A stretch of DNA of 64,000 bases from Oikopleura dioica (Eukaryota > Animalia > Chordata). Positions 5,437 to 45,392 of the stretch are shown here, piece after piece (within the stretch, counting starts at the first letter, position 1; the number at the start of each line of letters is the position of its first letter). The stretch covers positions 9,238,001 to 9,302,000 of the forward strand of contig OU015567.1 in assembly GCA_907165135.1 (NCBI GenBank), read 5' to 3'. A program made the translations under genes and the position numbers. The notes under the pieces were generated by a model, which was given only the letters and a program-made list of their open reading frames with translations, was not told the origin of the DNA and did not search any database.

Positions 5437-8400
5437 TTAGAGAGATGTTAATTTTATTTTTGAAAATTTGCCTTGTGTGGCTCTAAATGTAGGGCGGCTA
5501 GATTTCGCCTGCATAACGTGGGTCGAGATCGAGGAGCGTCCCGAGTGGTAAATACTCTGTTTTGCGGTCGATGTGTATGTCATTTGCGTCACCCGACGAC
5601 CCTCGCCAAACTCTTTTTCCATCTCGTCATCTCCTAGAATGCTGTCAGCATCATTTCCAGCTTGGAATCCTAAGTGTCTTTTCAACCATTCATTTTCTGA
5701 ATCAGAACCTGAGCTAGAAACTTATAAAAGTATGATCAAGAACGGTTTCTTAGCGTCATAACGTGATTCTGTGCCAAATTAATACAGTTGATGACTATCG
5801 TTTCGTCTATCTTTTACATTGGTCAATCCCTTCTACAAGCCCCTCGTAACTTCCAATGTCCATATCTCGAACCTCAAGCATGTCGATTGAAGGGATCCTA
5901 GCTTCTGCTGAATCTCCCACTTCTAGCGTAGTTTGCCTGCTCTCTATATCTGGACGAAGGAAGAAAACGAGTAAAGTATCTTTGACGTCTGTATTTCGAG
6001 CTGGAGTAAAATAGAGGTTAATTCACGAACTGCGAGAATTACCGAATGAAGAGAAATACACGGCGGCGACCGAGCAAAGCTCGATCTAGATAAGCAAGTG
6101 ACCTTAGGGGACGAGGGAGTCTAACGAATCTAAGATCCCAATACCCCCCATGAGACTGAAACGTCCTCTAAGGCCAAAGTGTGTGATTTTTGCAGGAGTA
6201 TAAGCGTAAGATGAGTAACATGGCAGGTTCGAAACGTCGAGGCAGTCTGATTCGCGTTAAAAAACCCTTTTTGGGAAAAAGCTTGAATCAGATGCGAAGT
6301 TTTCGTGATGTCCGAGCGGTGATGACATGAAGGAGTAGCTGCACATGTAGAAGAACTCAAAATACGTCGGCGACGGTAAACTGTGATATTTTCCGTACCT
6401 TTTCAGGCCCCGGTCGATGAATAGGGGACCTGAGTGGGGCAGTACTTGCGCTTAGTCGTATGACTGACCCGAGTTTGTGCCGATGTTAAGAGGTTCGACG
6501 GGCCTCGTTTCACGGTGTGCTCGTTTTGTATGTTTCGGGAGATGAGCTGCTCCAACTTCGGTTAAAGTCGCATTCGGATCGGCGCCGGCTGAGTACTGAC
6601 GATCTGGTGAAGACTTTGGACGGGTTCTTTTCTTGCTGTTTTCAGTTGCTGAGTCCTCAACTACTGTTGAGTTATGTTTATCGACTGACATATGGCTATT
6701 ATCGGGCGCAGCAACCTCCGAAATCACTGTAGCATCAGCTGACGTGTCCTCGGCAGTTTCATAGAGAGTACCACCAGAGTACCAGCGATCTGACGGCTCG
6801 GCTGGAGCTACCGACGAGTCCAAAATAGATGTAGCGGTTGTATCTCCCAGATTTTCCATGTCCAATCGGCGTCTACTTTCCAAAATAGGTGATAGAGATG
6901 ATCTTGGCGGTTTTTCCATAGCAACCATCGGAGTCGACGCGACCTGAGAAGATTTCCTCCCCCCATGCGACTTCGACCCGGACTTTTCCATCGGTTTGGA
7001 AGTAGGAACAGGCGATTTTTGTGGGACTTTCGACTTAACGATTTCGGTTAAATGTGGGAATACGTACTCGGCCTCGTAGTAATCAATCCAGCGTAAGTCG
7101 TGATTTCGTTCTGCGGCGTGAACCACGTGTTCTCGATGGATGAAATCACGTTGTCCTTTCTTATCTTCGACCATGACGACCCAGTCGTTGCTCGAAACGG
7201 CTTTCAGGGGACCTACCCAGCGTTCCTTCTTGCTTTTAGCGTCGGTCAGGTTTTCTCGCTTAATGTACACGACAGCGCCAGCGGGGATTGGTCTCGGCTT
7301 AGGCTCGTTTTTCAGCCTGTGCTCCAGTCGCTCGCAGCACCAGACAATGCTAAACATTTCCTTTTCTGAAGTGTTCCATTTTCTTTCAGCTTTGTTGAAG
7401 GTGTGGGAAATCGCGCTTACTAGGTGCACTCTCCCGCCATACTCTTGTAGCAGGACGCCACCCGCTGCGTACAGGCTCGCGTCTGTGTAGAGATGAAAAG
7501 ACTCGTCAAAGTTAGGAAAACTTATGACTGGAGTCTCGGAGAGTCGTCGTTGAATTTCCTTGAGCGCCAAATCCGCTTCTTTGGTCCACTTGAAACAATT
7601 TGTTTCGTTCGCCGAATTTCGAACATCGTTTATGGGCTTCATTCTGCTCGAGAAGCAACCGGATGAAATAGCTTCGCCCATTTTCGTTTCTAGAAAACCT
7701 CGGATCCAATTCAATGACCCGATTAATGAAGCTAACTCCTTTTGGGAGCGTGGGGGTTTCATCTGACGAAGAGCGGAGACTTGCGCAGGGTCCGGTTTGA
7801 TTCCATCTTCGTTGATGATTCGGCCCAAAAAGTGAGCTTCGGATTGTAGGAAAGAGCACTTTTCGCCCTTGAGTTTAGCGTTAAACTTGCGGAGCGCGAT
7901 GAATAGGTTTCGGAGAGTGTTATAATAGCAGCTGAAAGTCTTCCCAAAACACACTATGTCATCGATATAAGAAAGCATCTTTTTCCTGGTGGGGCTTGAG
8001 TCGAGAATTGTGTTTACGACGCGCGAGAATATATTCCCCGAGCATCGATAACCGAATGGTAGTCTGCAGAAGGCGTAAGATTTCCCACCCCACTGGAAGG
8101 AAGTCTTGTACCTGTCGCTTTTCTTTACAGGGCACTGCCAATATCCACTTCGTAGATCAACTGTGGCGAAAAACTTATTGCCCGGTCCAATGTTCGCGAT
8201 CGTATCCTCCATGCTTGGGAGATGGTAAGGGTCGGATTTGTCGGAGAGGCATTTGTTCAGGCTGTTTTTGTAGTTGATGCAGAAGCGCATTTCCCCAGAT
8301 TTCTTAGGAATAGGCAATACCGGGCTGTTAAACCCTTTCTGGTCTTTGATCTCTTCTATTATTTTCGTTTCGAGCAGTTCGGAGATGTGATCGCTGACCT

Positions 8401-11400
8401 GACCATGAAAAGCTTGCGGAATCGGGTGTTGACTGATGTTTCGACTCGTACCATCAGTCGGGATTTCGATCTCGAACGGGAATTCACCCATTTTTTGACC
8501 GTCGCAGCCGAATCTGTCGTCGAATTCCAAACACAGCTCGGCGACCATCTTCTTTTGCCCCGGGTCTGCGTCTGCTGGTAGGGTTATTCCGAGTTTTTGC
8601 TTCGCTAGCTGAATGGGGCACCTGGCTGCGTTCTTGTTCGGCGCGTCCAGCTTTGGGACTTCTCGTGGTGGTTGAGTGCGGGACCGATCGCTGTCTTTGA
8701 CCGCTGATCTAGTCGTCAAGTATTTCTTGATTTTGGTCCGCTTCACTCCGTCCAGCTTCACCACTTGAGTCTCAGTTTGTGTGAAGGCTTCGTTGTAGCA
8801 AAATGAGAGAGTACGATTCTTATTGTCGACTGTGAAGCTGTCCGTCATCGCATTCTCTAGTATATCGCGGCCCAGTAGACTTGGGTATTTACTGCCTGGC
8901 ATGATGGTGAGATTCAAGGAGAATGCAGGGCCACCATTGAATGATAAGCGGCAGGGAAGGATACCCCTCGGCTGCTCGGCGGGGATATTTGGGCTGAAAC
9001 CGGTGACCTTGAAGGGGCAGGGCTTCAGCATCTGGAGAAATTTGTCGGGAACGTAAGCAGCGGACAGACAGGAGGACTCGGCTCCGCTGTCGACTTCCAT
9101 CGATACGTCAAAACTTTTAGAGCCCGTAATGATGGTAGCCGAAGCGAAATAAGCCTTTCCTGGTCGCTTCTTCTTCACTGTGTAAAAGTGAACATCGAAT
9201 GGTTGGAAATCTTCGACGTTCTTAGTCGTATTAATCTTCTTGGATTCTGGTTGTTTATCGTCTTTCCCATCCTTAGAATCGGTGCTGGCGCGCTTAGCAT
9301 TCTTCTTCTTTTTGTTCTTATTTCTGTTGAAGTGCTGGGAGACGGTCGCGCTGTCAACTCGATTCTGTCTTGTGGATTGGGCGAGACGGCAGAGTTCGTT
9401 GATATCGTAAACTTTTGATAGGCTTGGAAGGATTGCGTTGAAAACGTCTGGTTCTTCTTTCCTAAGATTCAAGTACAGCATCATCGTCGAGAATATGTCG
9501 AATATTTCATCGACCCCGGCGTCGGCTGACTTCTCTTGTCGGTAAGAGTTCAAAGTCGCTTGCTTCGCCTCGTTCATCTTTTGCAAGACGTTGGCGGTGT
9601 AGTGTGCAAACGGCTTCGAATGGTCGTATTCGACGTCGAAAACTTCGCTTAGCTTCAGTAAGTAGTGACTCTTCGCGGCGAATGATTTCTCTAGCAGCGC
9701 CTTGGCCGATTTCCAGTCTTGACAATTCAGAAATTCGGTTCCAAGTGAGCGTTCGATGTTCAAGTCGAAGTGGCTGTACACTGCTGCGATGAAAGGCTGT
9801 TCACGTGAAGGTCTGTCGCGGACGTAGGCGCGGTGATAAATGTCGGCTCTGCCCAAGAAGGTGTTGAAAGATGTGTTGCATGCGGCGTCCAGCTTCGGCA
9901 AGTCTTGGACGTGACGAGACCAGGTAGTGGCCACCCATGCTTCTTCTCTCATTGTAGCATTCGTAGATTCTTTTCCTTGATCGAGCTCGCAGGTAAGAAG
10001 CGTTGTACTGAGCTGTTCTAATTTTACTCTGCTTTCTGTGATCAAGGGCTCTAGGCTTGGCTTAAGTGATTCGTCATTTCGCACTTGTTCTTCGAGGTAG
10101 TTTACTCGATCGTTTATGCTTCTTATTTCGGTGACGGTTTCTAGCAGTGATTTGTTCGCCGCCATAGCTCGAAATATATCGGCAGTAAGGGTTTATGGGC
10201 CTTGGATTACCTTTCAGGCCCTCAGAAAATACTGCGACTAAAAGTCGCAATATGATGAGCTGAGGTGCCTTTTGCGCAAACGCCCGACGATTTCTCTGTC
10301 CAGCGATTGTCGAAATTTCAAGGTCTGGTCCAAGGGTCGATTCTTCGTAAACTTCTCTCGATTTTTGGTGAAAAGTGGCGAAAGAATTCTGTTTTTCTGA
10401 GTATTTTAGGTTTTCCCCGGCGTGCGTGCGTGGTTGCGTGGGCGCGACTTTCGGCGCGTGGGTCGTGGTGGCGCTCGTGTGGTGGCGCTCGCTCGGGGTG
10501 GTGTTGGTGTGGTGCGGCGCGGAAAATTCTCTGAGTGGAGTTTCTCCGGCGGCGCGGTGGCGGTTGGTGATTCGGTTCCCCTCGACTCCGCTGACGGCCA
10601 ATCAGCGTCCAAGTTGCGAAACTTCGGTTGTCGATGGCGGAAAATTTACCTTTTCTCCAACGGGACTACTCTGATACCACTGAAGGGATCCTAGCTTCTG
10701 CTGAATCTCCCACTTCTAGCGTAGTTTGCCTGCTCTCTATATCTGGACGAAGGAAGAAAACGAGTAAAGTATCTTTGACGTCTGTATTTCGAGCTGGAGT
10801 AAAATAGAGGTTAATTCACGAACTGCGAGAATTACCGAATGAAGAGAAATACACGGCGGCGACCGAGCAAAGCTCGATCTAGATAAGCAAGTGACCTTAG
10901 GGGACGAGGGAGTCTAACGAATCTAAGATCCCAATACGATCGTAATCATTCTTGCCCCGGAGCAAGCCATTTTCACCAGCTTACTTATGATAACCTAGAT
11001 AAATCAATTACAATTTCATTCGATACTAATTTACATTTTGACCAGGATAGAGGACATTGCCATTGAGTTTTAAGTAGGCTTCTTCTCCATAAATCCTCTC
11101 TTTTGTAGGATCGGAGTATTTGCAAGCGAGAATGAGAATATGAATAATGATTCCTAAAAGGATTCCATAGTAGGACTCGTAAAGCGCAAATAAAAATGAA
11201 ATCGCCAGCGGCAATAAATCAATCTTCGAAGTCTTCCAGCACATTTCAACGGCGTGTGTGTTAAACATGGAAGCAGCGGAGACCATTATAACCGCCCCAA
11301 GTAAAGCTGCAGGAACATAAAGGAAAAGGTCAGCGAGAAGGTAAGTCGCAGTGAGAACAATGCCGCCAACGAAAACGCCCGATAAAGAACTCGCAGCGTT

Positions 11401-42487: not shown

Positions 42488-43708
42488 ATTATATTCAGTC
42501 AGGGATAGGGCGAAGCCGACCCGAAGGGGAGGCCACGCCTTATTATTAAATTCAGTCAGGAATAGGGCGAAGCCGACCCGAAGGGGAGGCCTTGCCTTAT
42601 TATTAAATTCAGTCAGGGATAGGGCGAAGCTGACCCGAAGGAGAGGCTACGCCTGTTTTTTCAATTCAGTCAGGGACGGGGCGAAACCGACCCGAAGGGG
42701 AGGCAACGCCTGTTTTTTCAATTCGGTCAGAGACGGGGCGAAGCCGACCCGAAGGGGAGGCCACGCCTTATATTTAAATTCAGTCAGGGATAGAGCGAAG
42801 CCGACCCGAAGAGGAGGCAATGCCTGTTTTTAAGTCAGGAACAGGACGAAGCCGACCCGAAGGGGAGGCAACGCCTGTTTATTCAATTCAGTCAGGGACA
42901 GGGCGAAGCCGACCCGAAGGGGAGCCAACGCCTGTTTATAAAATTAAGTCAGGGACAGGGGGAAGCCGACCCGAAGGGGAGGCCAGGCCTCTTTATATAA
43001 TTCAGTCAGGGACGGGGCAAAGCCGACCCGAAGGGGAGGCAATGCCTGTTTTATAAGTCAGGGACAGGGCGAAGCCGACCCGAAGGGAAGACAAGCCCTG
43101 TTTACTCTATTCAGTCTGAAACGGGGCCAAGCAGACCCGAAGGGGGGGCAGTCTTATTTGTTTAATACAGTCTGAGACGTGGCAAAGCCGATCCGAAGGG
43201 TCGGCCAGTCCAGTTTATTTAATTCCTTCAGGTCACCGATTAAAATAGAATTTGAGGAATTTGATGATGATGGTAATGGATCGACGAGTATATGTCGAAT
43301 TTATTGCGCTTTCTGACTGAAAATAAGAAAGCAAGTTCTTTGTCCGAGTACAAGTGTTCCACAGAAATGTTCAAATTTCGAATCGAATAAACGTTTATGT
43401 CGCCCCTTGTACTTATTTTGGGCTGGAGGTTTCAAATCTGTTAAGAGTTTCCTTGGAAAACTAGGATGGAATGCTCAAAAATAATGCTGAACAAATGTCT
43501 ATGCAAGACGACACTTTATATGAAGAAACGCGACATCCACGACGATTCTTTCTTCGATGTTGCATATATGAAGGTTTGACCGATGAAGAATCCAGACTCC
43601 CATCTTCGAGGATGCATCTTTGATGATGTTTGGATAGAATTGATCTGTGGGAGAAGGCCCCCTCCTCTTAGGCATAGTAACTGGCTCAAATGGCGGACAA
43701 AGTCCCCG

Positions 43709-43780
43709 GGAGAAGTAGTGCAGTGGTAGCACACCGGTTCATGAACACGGAGGTCCCTGGTTCGACCCCAGGCTTCTTCA
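43709..43780 (+). ncRNA. tRNA-like cassette in 5' LTR (defective anticodon arm)
   Basis: GGAGAAG/CTTCTTC acceptor stem, GTGC/GCAC D stem with A-box TAGTGCAGTGG, CCTGG/CCAGG T stem with B-box GGTTCGACC, discriminator A, TTTT at 43785-43788. Confidence 0.8.
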
Positions 43781-44081
43781 ATACTTTTCACTCGCCTTTG
43801 CCTGATCCTACAAACTGGTGAAGACAGTGGGTTGTCTAGGTAGCCAAAATAAATCCTAAGCTGAGATTGACAAAGGGTCACTCAGTAGCTCAGGAGAAGC
43901 TGAAGGTTGGGAGGGTTGGTAGGCTTGCAACGGTTGGGGACCGTGGCACCAGACAAAGAACCAAAAACCCAAGGCGGCATATGTAAGACGAGTTGTTAGA
44001 GCAGTTACTAGGGGGAGTTGTGGGAGAAGGCCCCCTCCTCTTAGGCATAGTAACTGGCTCAAATGGCGGACAAAGTCCCCG

Positions 44082-44153
44082 GGAGAAGTAGTGCAGTGGT
44101 AGCACACCGGTTCATGAACACGGAGGTCCCTGGTTCGACCCCAGGCTTCTTCA
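44082..44153 (+). ncRNA. tRNA-like cassette in 3' LTR (identical copy)
   Basis: Same 72-nt sequence as 43709-43780. Confidence 0.8.
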
Positions 44154-45392
44154 ATACTTTTCACTCGCCTTTGCCTGATCCTACAGATCAAAGAAATATG
44201 TCATTTACCGAGGATGCAGAAACAAAGATTAAGTCAAGCCTCTCAAACACTCTGATTTCTTGCGATAAATTTATTTTACAATATAATCATTTAAACTGAA
44301 TCACAGAATAATAAAATCGAGCTTTTCTTCCGAGTTCGTCACTTCTATCATTTTCAGCCCTAAGAACAGTACAAAAATTTCAAGAAGCTTCTGAGAATTC
44401 GAAAAGAAGCTGAAAAAGAACACCAACAATCTGCAATCATCACTGAAAGAATTTCACCTCAGTAGTAAGAATTTAGTGCCGGGGTCCGAGCAACATGGAT
44501 CTTTTTGTTCCCCCCGAGGGTTGAGCCCATTGTTCTCGGCGGAAGTTGACCCTTTGTTCGGACCGATTTTTATCAGACCCTGGCACCTCCTGTTTCTTTT
44601 GTTTGTACTGTATAATAATTAAAATTAATATTGCGAAATCAAGCAGCATTTTGTTTGTTATTTATTCTTCTAGAGCTTCTTGAAAACATGAGTTTTTAAT
44701 CAAAACAAAAACAGTTTGAAGAGATATATAAGAGAGAGACAGAGATAATACGATTGACACTTCAAAATAATAATGACCAATTATTATTATTATTTTTATA
44801 ATTTTAATTTCAAAAACTTAATAATAATGACATGCTTAATTCTTTTTCTTCAGATTTTTCGATGCCAGGAGGTCAAAGTTTTTGTTGTGTCATACCAGGT
44901 TGTCTAGACCCCGAGCCCTTGTACCACAAAACGGCTAGTAGCAACTATTTGAAGCAACACTTCTGTGTCCGATGTAAGTTCAGTGGTTCTTGTGTTTTTT
45001 TTCAAGATATTTAACCAAAATTCTGGAGAAAATTGTTCATTATCGACTCATAAAGTCAGCAGAAAATTTTGGTTGAAAAGCAAGAATTTTGTTCTTGAAT
45101 GCATTCTTGTAAAAAAAAAACATGACTAGAATTCATTTTAAAGAAATATCTGTCGAAAAAGACGATTAAGCAGTCTATCACTTTGAACGGCTCTTTTGGG
45201 ACATGACAGTGTCCATAAGCTTAGATGAAATCTAGTTTGACTTTAGCTGCGGCAAGCTTTCTCCGACAAGCGGCCAGGGCTATAATCAAATTGTCCAAAG
45301 TGGGCTTCAAGGGCGGACAAGTGGATTTGTGCTCCAGGCGCCTAAGAGTTGTTTGCAGAAGCAACGTGCCTTAGCTGCGATCGAGGAGATAA

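What the first reader, a model, noticed from the sequence alone, without database searches (positions are those of the whole stretch)
43766..43833. The TRIM primer-binding site partly matches the 3' end of its own encoded tRNA-like RNA: possible self-supplied primer
Seen: the LTR RNA ends ...CCAGGCTTCTTCA. After CCA addition its complement is TGGTGAAGAAGCCTGG, and the PBS reads TGGTGAAGACAGTGGG, a perfect match for the first 9 nt and 11 of 18 overall. The cassette has its own terminator and intact acceptor and T arms, which are the features RNase P/Z and CCA-adding enzyme read. Inference: the element may make its own RT primer, or the cassette derives from the primer tRNA. Alternatively a host tRNA ending CCCACTGTCTTCA-CCA is the real primer.
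Basis: partly seen in the sequence, partly recalled or inferred. Interest (0 to 1): 0.75.

Follow-up and report, generated by a model that had tools for sequence, protein, structure and literature searches.

The report
Helenus mini-retrotransposon with mosaic primer site
A 540-base protein-less jumping gene of the tunicate Oikopleura dioica carries a tRNA-like gene in each end, and its primer site partly matches both that tRNA-like RNA and the host's leucine tRNAs, so a self-made primer stays possible but is not the best-supported reading.

Summary
The primer-binding site (PBS, 43816-43831) is complementary to the CCA-tailed 3' end of the tRNA-like cassette in the LTR (43709-43780) over its first 9 nt, and at 11 of 16 positions.

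The element is a Helenus/TRIMp3-type TRIM, a kind described by Kojima in 2024. It is new for tunicates, and this scan had already noted it on other copies in this genome.

No RNA encoded in the 64-Mb genome complements the PBS fully. All 12 exact genomic copies of the 13-mer complement are the TRIM's own PBS.

The PBS is, however, a tRNA-Leu-type PBS with a scrambled centre. Four host tRNA-Leu-type families (27 genes) match it in register at positions 1-6 and 11-16. The best pairs at 14 of 16 positions, counting one G-U. So six of the nine "own" matches (TGGTGA) are generic, and only three (AGA) are specific to the cassette.

Duplex energies are similar: -20.8 kcal/mol for the cassette and about -18.5 for tRNA-Leu. 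Covariation cannot be tested, because the cassette is invariant in 26 LTRs and the PBS varies at one position in one copy.

Best reading: a host tRNA-Leu primes (about 0.5). Self-priming is about 0.2.

The parts
43642..43645 (+). Target-site duplication GATC, left copy
   Evidence: The same 4 bases lie at 44186-44189. Every other full copy has its own 4-bp TSD.
43646..43812 (+). 5' LTR, 167 nt (TGTGGG...CCTACA)
   Evidence: 100% identical to 44019-44185. 27 LTR loci were recovered in the genome, two of which are one segmental duplicate.
43646..43708 (+). Variable, U3-like part of the LTR
   Evidence: 13 of 63 sites vary among 26 LTRs, and there are indels as well.
43709..43780 (+). tRNA-like Pol III cassette: acceptor GGAGAAG/CTTCTTC, discriminator A, T arm CCTGG/CCAGG, imperfect anticodon stem
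   Evidence: ARAGORN. Rfam tRNA 50.5 bits. 0 of 72 sites vary among 26 LTRs, apart from one singleton 1-nt insertion.
43785..43788 (+). TTTT Pol III terminator-like run, 5 nt after the discriminator
   Evidence: This run and its twin in the 3' LTR are the only T4 runs in the element. Host tRNA-Ile and tRNA-Arg genes end with the same kind of T4 run.
43813..43815 (+). 3-nt spacer AAC between LTR end and PBS
   Evidence: Other LTR families of this genome have ...TACA-AAT-TGGTG... at the same junction.
43816..43831 (+). Primer-binding site TGGTGAAGACAGTGGG. It is a mosaic. Positions 1-9 complement the cassette's 3' end plus CCA. Positions 1-6 and 11-16 complement host tRNA-Leu 3' ends.
   Evidence: Identical in 12 of 13 internal units; one unit has C to T at position 10.
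43813..44018 (+). Internal region, 206 nt, too short to encode gag or pol
   Evidence: only mechanical ORFs of up to 121 aa, running through LTR sequence. One search marked 18 of 206 columns as variable among 13 units; several of these, next to the PPT, come from indels.
44010..44017 (+). Polypurine tract AGGGGGAG, 1 nt before the 3' LTR
   Evidence: The PPT/LTR-start junction is exact at 10 sites and slightly diverged at 3, all of them this family's copies.
44019..44185 (+). 3' LTR, with the second cassette at 44082-44153 and TTTT at 44158-44161
44186..44189 (+). Target-site duplication GATC, right copy

Best explanation
The element is a young, non-autonomous Helenus/TRIMp3-type TRIM of Oikopleura dioica. 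Its PBS is a degenerate tRNA-Leu-type PBS. The outer blocks, TGGTGA and AGTGGG, sit in the exact register of the host tRNA-Leu 3' end: CCA, A73, positions 72-71, then position 66 and the T-stem strand CCCAC. Only the four central positions differ.

The most likely primer is a host tRNA-Leu, above all the 3-gene family ending TCTTGTCA. It would anneal through two 6-bp blocks plus two further pairs in the centre, one of them G-U. A Tor (Ty3/gypsy) reverse transcriptase supplied in trans would extend it.

The tRNA-like cassette serves mainly as the element's Pol III promoter and conserved R/U5-like 5' region, as Kojima proposed for Helenus. Its 9-nt match to the PBS is two-thirds generic.

Shown here: the anatomy, the copy set, the lack of any perfectly matching RNA gene, the in-register tRNA-Leu match, and the conservation pattern.

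Inferred: which RNA actually primes, Pol III transcription, and the helper element.
For: - One search lists 35 host tRNA genes with a CCCAC T-stem strand (the reversed-pattern control gave 1). They include families ending TTCAGTCA (x13), TCCTGTCA (x7), TTCTGACA (x4), TCTTGTCA (x3) and CTTTGTCA (x2).
- One search shows that the x13 family is an 82-nt tRNA-Leu-AAG.
- Searches give the fit to the PBS. Identity is 11-13 of 16, and 14 of 16 positions pair for TCTTGTCA. Duplex energy is -18.3 to -18.7 kcal/mol, except -16.8 for CTTTGTCA. The fraction of shuffles reaching the observed energy is 0.008-0.016 (0.034 for CTTTGTCA).
- tRNA-Leu is a usual primer of LTR elements here. Seven loci carry an 18-nt match to the complement of the TTCTGACA 3' end. 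Thirteen loci of several subfamilies have ...TACA-AAT-TGGTGACTGA, a 10-11-nt PBS for tRNA-Leu-AAG.
- The TRIM's junction, CCTACA-AAC-TGGTGA, resembles that second group.
- Kojima 2024 (PMC10886601) reports that animal Helenus make 4-bp TSDs, use the 3' ends of host tRNAs including Leu, and show no complementarity between LTR tRNA and PBS.
- The 4-bp TSDs are confirmed here.
Against: - No tRNA-Leu pairs with more than 6 contiguous nt from its 3' end, while the cassette offers 9, and the cassette duplex is about 2 kcal/mol more stable.
- Co-resident Leu-primed families have uninterrupted PBSs of 10-18 nt, so a 6+6 split site is unusual here.
- The mismatched centre is kept in at least three sublineages that each inserted recently. 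That is odd if it is only decay.
- No autonomous element sharing this PBS or this LTR was found.
Confidence: 0.5

Rival explanations
1. Self-supplied primer. Pol III transcribes the cassette from any of the LTR copies found here (26 counted) and stops at the T4 run. RNase P and RNase Z trim the RNA and the CCA-adding enzyme tails it. The resulting 75-nt RNA anneals through 9 nt (UGGUGAAGA) to the PBS of a full-length TRIM transcript and primes the helper's reverse transcriptase.
For: - The 9-nt uninterrupted helix from the 3' end is the longest any tRNA-shaped gene of this genome can offer. A T-loop-anchored search for 3' ends ...CTTCA returned the LTR cassettes plus 33 other sites, and none of those 33 is a tRNA.
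- No tRNA-shaped gene ends in GTCTTCA.
- The cassette duplex, -20.8 kcal/mol, is the most stable tested. 0.4% of shuffles reach it.
- Other LTR families here work with PBSs of only 10-11 nt.
- The whole cassette is invariant among diverged sublineages, including the acceptor stem and not only the A and B boxes: 0 of 72 variable sites against 13 of 63 upstream, Fisher p = 2e-5.
- Its terminator is of the same type as those of host tRNA genes.
Against: - Six of the nine matched nt are shared with every tRNA-Leu-type PBS, so the specific evidence is 3 nt (about 1 in 64 by chance).
- Pairing beyond 9 nt is at chance level.
- Positions 11-16 match tRNA-Leu in register and not the cassette, which self-priming does not explain.
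- If the cassette were the selected primer, a longer perfect match would be expected; none of 13 units moves towards it.
- Kojima looked for this complementarity across Helenus families and found none.
- The conservation fits an R/U5 or promoter role equally well.
- The cassette's fold is not more stable than shuffles (z = -0.7), and its anticodon stem is imperfect.
Confidence: 0.2
2. Fossil of a primer switch. An ancestral perfect tRNA-Leu PBS was partly overwritten when the cassette RNA, or another RNA ending ...UCUUCA-CCA, once primed and was copied into plus-strand DNA. Patchy repair left cassette-type sequence at positions 1-9 and Leu-type sequence at 11-16. Either RNA may prime today.
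For: The PBS is an in-register mosaic of exactly these two complements. The four adjacent central differences are hard to get by independent point changes. A note from another window of this scan (s1-378124, not checked here) reports a reverse-transcription scar with 18 nt copied from a tRNA-Leu primer in this genome.
Against: Position 10 (C) fits neither source. No intermediate PBS forms exist among the 13 units. None of the recent insertions shows any new conversion of the PBS, which argues that primer sequence is not usually inherited here. With only four informative positions this cannot be told apart from chance.
Confidence: 0.1
3. The real primer is an RNA that these searches could not see. 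It might be a tRNA gene missing from the assembly or with a non-canonical T loop, an edited or fragment RNA, or a host tRNA that needs only 6-8 terminal pairs. In that case both partial matches are incidental.
For: A full tRNA census was not possible: only 63 of 3446 Rfam candidates were scored, so absence rests on pattern searches. One unexplained single site, C1:6328554-6328577, reads as a T-loop-like stretch followed by the exact 9-nt complement CTGTCTTCA and then CCA.
Against: The 13-mer complement was searched without any structural assumption, and all 12 exact hits are the TRIM's own PBS. None of the one-mismatch hits inspected is a tRNA. The method does find primers: the tRNA-Leu-AAG genes matching the 10-11-nt PBS of other families came out cleanly. 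The odd C1 site has no paired 5' acceptor strand at tRNA distance.
Confidence: 0.15

Closest known systems
Helenus (TRIMp3), TRIMs with a tRNA-derived sequence in the LTR; Kojima 2024, PMC10886601
   Same: Two short LTRs, each holding a tRNA-like sequence with A and B boxes. A PBS lies just after the 5' LTR and a PPT just before the 3' LTR. There is no coding capacity. TSDs are 4 bp, as in animal Helenus. Tandem arrays occur. The PBS is of a host-tRNA 3'-end type.
   Different: Tunicates are not among the hosts in the paper's text or its held supplements. The paper reports no complementarity between LTR tRNA and PBS in any family, whereas here there is a 9-nt match. The PBS here has no perfectly matching host tRNA, and no autonomous element shares it.
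Cassandra, plant TRIM with a 5S rRNA gene in the LTR
   Same: A non-autonomous TRIM whose LTRs carry a Pol III gene with promoter and terminator. Its function is thought to be transcription of the element.
   Different: The captured gene is 5S rRNA rather than a tRNA, the host is a plant, and the PBS matches a host tRNA (from my own knowledge and the introduction of PMC10886601). It was not tested here beyond the tRNA call.
Self-priming LTR retrotransposons (Tf1 of fission yeast)
   Same: The element itself supplies the primer instead of a host tRNA, which is the idea at stake here.
   Different: In Tf1 (from my own knowledge) the 5' end of the same transcript folds back onto the PBS and is cut by RNase H. 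No CCA is involved. Here the PBS starts with TGG, and without the CCA the LTR offers only a short broken match read off (6 pairs, then a bulge, then 3 more). Any self-priming would therefore be in trans, by a processed tRNA-like RNA.
Tor elements (Ty3/gypsy of Oikopleura), the likely helpers
   Same: 4-bp TSDs, G-rich PPTs and LTR ends ...CA. Several families here have the junction ...TACA-AAT-TGGTG with tRNA-Leu PBSs. A 5-kb copy lies in this window at 5888-10937.
   Different: The copy in the window uses a different PBS (TGGTATCAGAG...) and an unrelated LTR. No Tor family with this TRIM's PBS or LTR was found.

Membership tests
Helenus / TRIMp3 | Short non-autonomous LTR element (published range 311-1263 bp) with two LTRs and no gag or pol | tested here: met
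   540 bp, 167-nt identical LTRs and a 206-nt interior. Only mechanical ORFs of up to 121 aa.
Helenus / TRIMp3 | tRNA-derived sequence with A and B boxes inside each LTR | tested here: met
   ARAGORN. Rfam tRNA 50.5 bits against a gathering score of 29. B box GGTTCGACCCC. A box matches 10 of 11 positions (read).
Helenus / TRIMp3 | PBS next to the 5' LTR and PPT next to the 3' LTR | tested here: met
   TGG... starts 3 nt after the LTR. AGGGGGAG ends 1 nt before the 3' LTR. Both are conserved across copies.
Helenus / TRIMp3 | 4-bp TSDs in animals | tested here: met
   GATC here. GTAC, GAGT, AGCG, TTAT, GGTC and others at other copies.
Helenus / TRIMp3 | Mobilised by an autonomous Gypsy element with a similar PBS region | tested here: inconclusive
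   At least 150 integrase-bearing loci exist, but none shares the PBS or the LTR. Only the junction type ...TACA-AAY-TGGTG is shared, with Leu-primed families.
Helenus / TRIMp3 | Pol III transcription from the LTR cassette | not testable with these tools
   It needs RNA data. Only the promoter boxes and the T4 terminator are seen.
Element with a self-encoded tRNA-like primer (hypothetical class) | The PBS complements the element's own RNA better than any host RNA | tested here: inconclusive
   The cassette gives the longest terminal helix (9 nt against 6) and the lowest duplex energy (-20.8 against -18.7). Host tRNA-Leu pairs at more positions in register (14 of 16 against 11 of 16).
Element with a self-encoded tRNA-like primer (hypothetical class) | Covariation of the PBS with the cassette's acceptor 3' strand | tested here: inconclusive
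   The cassette is invariant in 26 LTRs. The single PBS variant, C to T at position 10, has no partner change. No relatives from other genomes could be reached.
Tf1-type cis self-priming | The 5' end of the transcript is complementary to the PBS, without CCA | tested here: not met
   The PBS begins with TGG. The cassette's genomic continuation is ATA, not CCA. The 5' end of the cassette resembles the PBS rather than complementing it.
Cassandra | 5S rRNA sequence in the LTR | tested here: not met
   The Rfam scan of 43000-44800 finds tRNA only and no 5S.

The most novel reading that the evidence does not exclude
The CCA-tailed Pol III product of the LTR cassette is the real primer of reverse transcription. 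This Helenus family would then carry its own tRNA-like primer gene, 26 LTR copies of it in this assembly, and depend on the host only for tRNA-processing enzymes and on a Tor element for reverse transcriptase. The Leu-like outer blocks of the PBS would be a relic of an earlier tRNA-Leu-primed state.
Probability: 0.18. Interest if true: 0.8.

Novelty: new member of a known kind. Interest (0 to 1): 0.35.

Why it matters
LTR retroelements are thought to take their primer from the host tRNA pool, with Tf1-type cis self-priming as the known exception. An element that encodes a tRNA-like primer in trans would be a third way. It would also give the tRNA-like sequence of Helenus elements a second function beyond the Pol III promoter.

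The present evidence does not establish that. What it does give:
- A Helenus family in a tunicate.
- A recently active element whose PBS has no perfectly matching RNA in a near-complete 64-Mb genome.
- Two concrete primer candidates that a simple RNA experiment can separate.
- The finding that the whole cassette, with the stretch after it through the PBS, is the most conserved part of the element.

Tried and rejected
1. A host tRNA fully complementary to the PBS. I searched the 13-mer with up to 1 mismatch, the 16-mer with up to 3 mismatches, T-loop-anchored 3' ends GTCTTCA and CTTCA, a G-U-tolerant pattern, and a pattern requiring a paired acceptor stem. Nothing tRNA-like turned up apart from the TRIM's own cassette.

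2. The recurrent motif TGGTGAAGACTTTGGA looked like a shared PBS. It lies on the antisense strand near the 3' end of the pol ORF of the high-copy Tor family, so it is not a PBS.

3. The two-copy near-matches to the PBS have no LTRs around them.

4. Extended pairing of the PBS with the cassette's T arm is at composition level only (p about 0.3).

5. Relatives in public metagenomes. The cassette's D and anticodon region gave 0 hits. The T-arm 22-mer hit 120 or more contigs, mostly soil and sediment samples by their names. I used the tRNAs on them only as a control set.

6. A PPT/LTR-start look-alike, GGGGACGTTGTGGGAG, continues with no resemblance to the TRIM's LTR start and looks like coding sequence.

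7. A positive control for the Tor copy in the window: a host tRNA ending CTCTGATA.

8. I did not run the costly protein searches. Nothing in the question rests on a protein.

Full report
**What is there**

Window 43646-44185 is a 540-bp terminal-repeat retrotransposon in miniature (TRIM).
- Two 167-nt LTRs, 43646-43812 and 44019-44185, are 100% identical.
- The element is flanked by a 4-bp duplication, GATC.
- Each LTR holds a 72-nt tRNA-like sequence, at 43709-43780 and 44082-44153. ARAGORN calls it a tRNA, and Rfam's tRNA model scores it at 50.5 bits against a gathering score of 29.
- A TTTT run follows the cassette 5 nt later. This run and its twin in the 3' LTR are the only T4 runs in the element.
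- Three bases after the 5' LTR comes TGGTGAAGACAGTGGG (43816-43831).
- One base before the 3' LTR lies AGGGGGAG (44010-44017).
- The 206-nt interior cannot encode gag or pol.

**Whose genome**

The assembly has 64,281,565 bases in 19 contigs. The longest contig is 17,092,476 bases and contig C5 is 16,158,756. These figures agree with the Okinawa Oikopleura dioica assembly OKI2018_I69: 64.3 Mbp, 19 scaffolds, longest 17.1 Mbp, N50 16.2 Mbp, GC 41% (PMC8008620). This is an inference from statistics. Earlier notes of this scan name the same species. It is not human DNA.

**The family**

A DNA search of the genome finds 13 internal units and 27 LTR loci. Two of the LTR loci are one segmental duplicate.
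- One array at C1:2724384-2725654 has 4 LTRs and 3 interiors within a single TSD.
- There are 3 solo-LTR loci.
- Every insertion has its own 4-bp TSD.
- LTR pairs are identical in 7 of 10 simple copies, yet copies differ from each other by up to 6%.

Several sublineages have therefore each moved recently.

**What kind of element it is**

This anatomy is that of Helenus, the tRNA-bearing group of "TRIMp3" elements described by Kojima in 2024 (PMC10886601). Helenus has a tRNA-like sequence with A and B boxes in the LTR, a PBS and a PPT. In animals it makes 4-bp TSDs, forms tandem arrays and is presumed to be mobilised by Gypsy elements. Tunicates do not appear in that paper or in its held supplements. 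Other agents of this scan reached the same classification on other copies.

**The observation**

It is correct. With CCA added, the reverse complement of the cassette's 3' end equals the PBS over positions 1-9 and at 11 of 16 positions.
- In 20,000 composition-preserving shuffles of the cassette's 3' part, only 6 reach 9 contiguous matches. About 0.4% reach the duplex energy of -20.8 kcal/mol for 18 nt.
- The signal is the 9-nt helix alone. Given that helix, the rest pairs no better than shuffled sequence (p about 0.3).

**Is there a better host primer?**

- All 12 exact genomic copies of that 13-mer are the TRIM's own PBS read backwards.
- The one-mismatch sites that I inspected are not tRNAs.
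- Searches anchored on a canonical T loop and a 3' end GTCTTCA gave only non-tRNA sites.
- The same search with 3' end CTTCA returned the LTR cassettes plus 33 other sites, and none of those 33 is a tRNA.
- A pattern that also requires a paired acceptor stem gave 23 sites, none tRNA-like.
- G-U-tolerant versions gave nothing convincing.
- No other repeat family carries the first 12 nt of this PBS: there are 12 TRIM hits plus 4 singletons, against 5 in the control.

So no RNA gene in this assembly complements the PBS perfectly beyond 9 nt.

**The turn**

Notes from other windows say that LTR elements of this genome use tRNA-Leu. I therefore listed every host tRNA with the Leu-type T arm, GGGTTCRANNCCCAC. 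There are 35 genes, against 1 in the control.
- Their 3' ends are TTCAGTCA (x13), TCCTGTCA (x7), TTCTGACA (x4), TCTTGTCA (x3), CTTTGTCA (x2) and a few others.
- The x13 family is an 82-nt class-II tRNA with anticodon AAG.
- Four of these families (27 genes) complement the TRIM's PBS in register at positions 1-6 (5 of them for TTCTGACA) and 11-16. The TCTTGTCA family pairs at 14 of 16 positions, counting one G-U.
- Duplex energies are -18.3 to -18.7 kcal/mol. The fraction of shuffles reaching them is 0.008-0.016.

The PBS is therefore a tRNA-Leu-type PBS with a scrambled four-base centre (AGAC). Only positions 7-9 are specific to the cassette, roughly 1 in 64 by chance. Conversely, the in-register block AGTGGG fits tRNA-Leu and not the cassette.

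**Context from co-resident elements**
- Seven loci carry an 18-nt match to the complement of the TTCTGACA 3' end.
- Thirteen loci of several subfamilies share the junction ...TACA-AAT-TGGTGACTGA and diverge after 10-11 nt. That is a short PBS for tRNA-Leu-AAG.
- The TRIM's junction, CCTACA-AAC-TGGTGA, is of the same style.
- A 5-kb Tor-like element in this window (5888-10937, minus strand) has 257-nt identical LTRs and a 4-bp TSD, ATCG. Its PBS is different: TGGTATCAGAG....

These results show two things. The pattern method does find real primers. And PBSs of 10-11 nt are enough in this genome, which keeps a 9-nt cassette helix within a plausible range.

**Conservation**

Among 26 LTRs, nucleotide substitutions hit 13 of 63 sites upstream of the cassette, 0 of 72 sites in the cassette and 1 of 32 sites after it. 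One search marked 18 of 206 interior columns as variable among the 13 interior units, several of them next to the PPT because of indels. The first 34 nt of the interior, which include the PBS, carry one singleton. Fisher's test for cassette against upstream gives p = 2e-5.

The invariant block, 43709 to about 43849, is what an R-U5-PBS-leader would be if transcripts start at the cassette. It shows that the whole cassette matters to the element, not only its promoter boxes. It cannot tell a primer role from an R or promoter role.

Covariation cannot be tested. The only PBS variant, C to T at position 10 in one unit of the C1 array, has no partner change.

**Weighing**

For a host tRNA-Leu primer:
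- the in-register 12-14 of 16 fit;
- the usual practice of animal Helenus and of local Tor families;
- abundant genes.

For the cassette:
- the longest terminal helix;
- the best duplex energy;
- many gene copies;
- the puzzling retention of a centre that mismatches every tRNA-Leu.

Against both: no insertion shows any drift of the PBS towards a perfect match to either RNA.

I put a host tRNA-Leu at about 0.5, the self-made primer at about 0.2, a primer-switch fossil at about 0.1 and an unseen primer at about 0.15.

Kojima explicitly considered self-priming for Helenus and dismissed it because no family showed complementarity. This family is a partial exception, but a weak one.

**Limits**
- A full tRNA census was not possible: only 63 of 3446 candidates were scored.
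- The helper element is not identified.
- No other Oikopleura genome could be reached.

Noticed in passing
window 5888-10937 (minus strand): A complete 5-kb Tor-like Ty3/gypsy element. It has 257-nt, 100% identical LTRs, a 4-bp TSD (ATCG), the PBS TGGTATCAGAGTAGTCCC, a G-rich PPT, a 175-aa gag-like ORF and a 1237-aa pol ORF. It belongs to a family with at least 40 near-identical copies in the genome, many with a 1726-aa ORF.
   Followed up: partly
G000:C1:6328554-6328577 (not fetched): A single site reads ATTCAAAATTTGCTGTCTTCACCA. That is a T-loop-like stretch, then the exact 9-nt complement of PBS positions 4-12, then an encoded CCA. No paired 5' acceptor strand lies at tRNA distance. It could be chance (about 1%) or a relic of a tRNA-like retrocopy or of another element's PBS.
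   Followed up: no
L047:1500-1573 (G000:C1:10853572-10853640): The only relative of the cassette outside the TRIM. It is a stand-alone tRNA-like gene, 80% identical to the cassette, with the same acceptor 5' strand and T stem, an odd anticodon loop (ARAGORN calls it Ser-TGA despite a short variable arm), and a T7 terminator. It may be the source gene or a sister of the captured cassette.
   Followed up: partly
G000:C1:2724384-2725654 (L035, L036, L042): A tandem array of the TRIM: 4 LTRs and 3 interiors inside one TSD (GGTC). The middle unit carries the only PBS variant and a 13-nt internal deletion.
   Followed up: partly
G000, 13 loci listed: Several LTR subfamilies share the junction CA(C/G)TACA-AAT-TGGTGACTGA and then diverge. 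That is a conserved PBS of only 10-11 nt for tRNA-Leu-AAG. Short PBSs seem usual for one Tor clade here.
   Followed up: partly
G000:C1:16555762-16555787: One tRNA-Leu-type gene (3' end TCTTGTCA) is followed by CCA in the genome. This could be chance (1 in 64) or a retrocopied mature tRNA.
   Followed up: no
window 43000-43230: A tandem array of units about 60 nt long (cagggacggggcaaagccgacccgaagggg...) lies just upstream of the TRIM.
   Followed up: no
window 43259-43324: A weak match to the C/D-box snoRNA family SNORD27: 26 bits against a gathering score of 52, E = 0.11. Probably chance.
   Followed up: no
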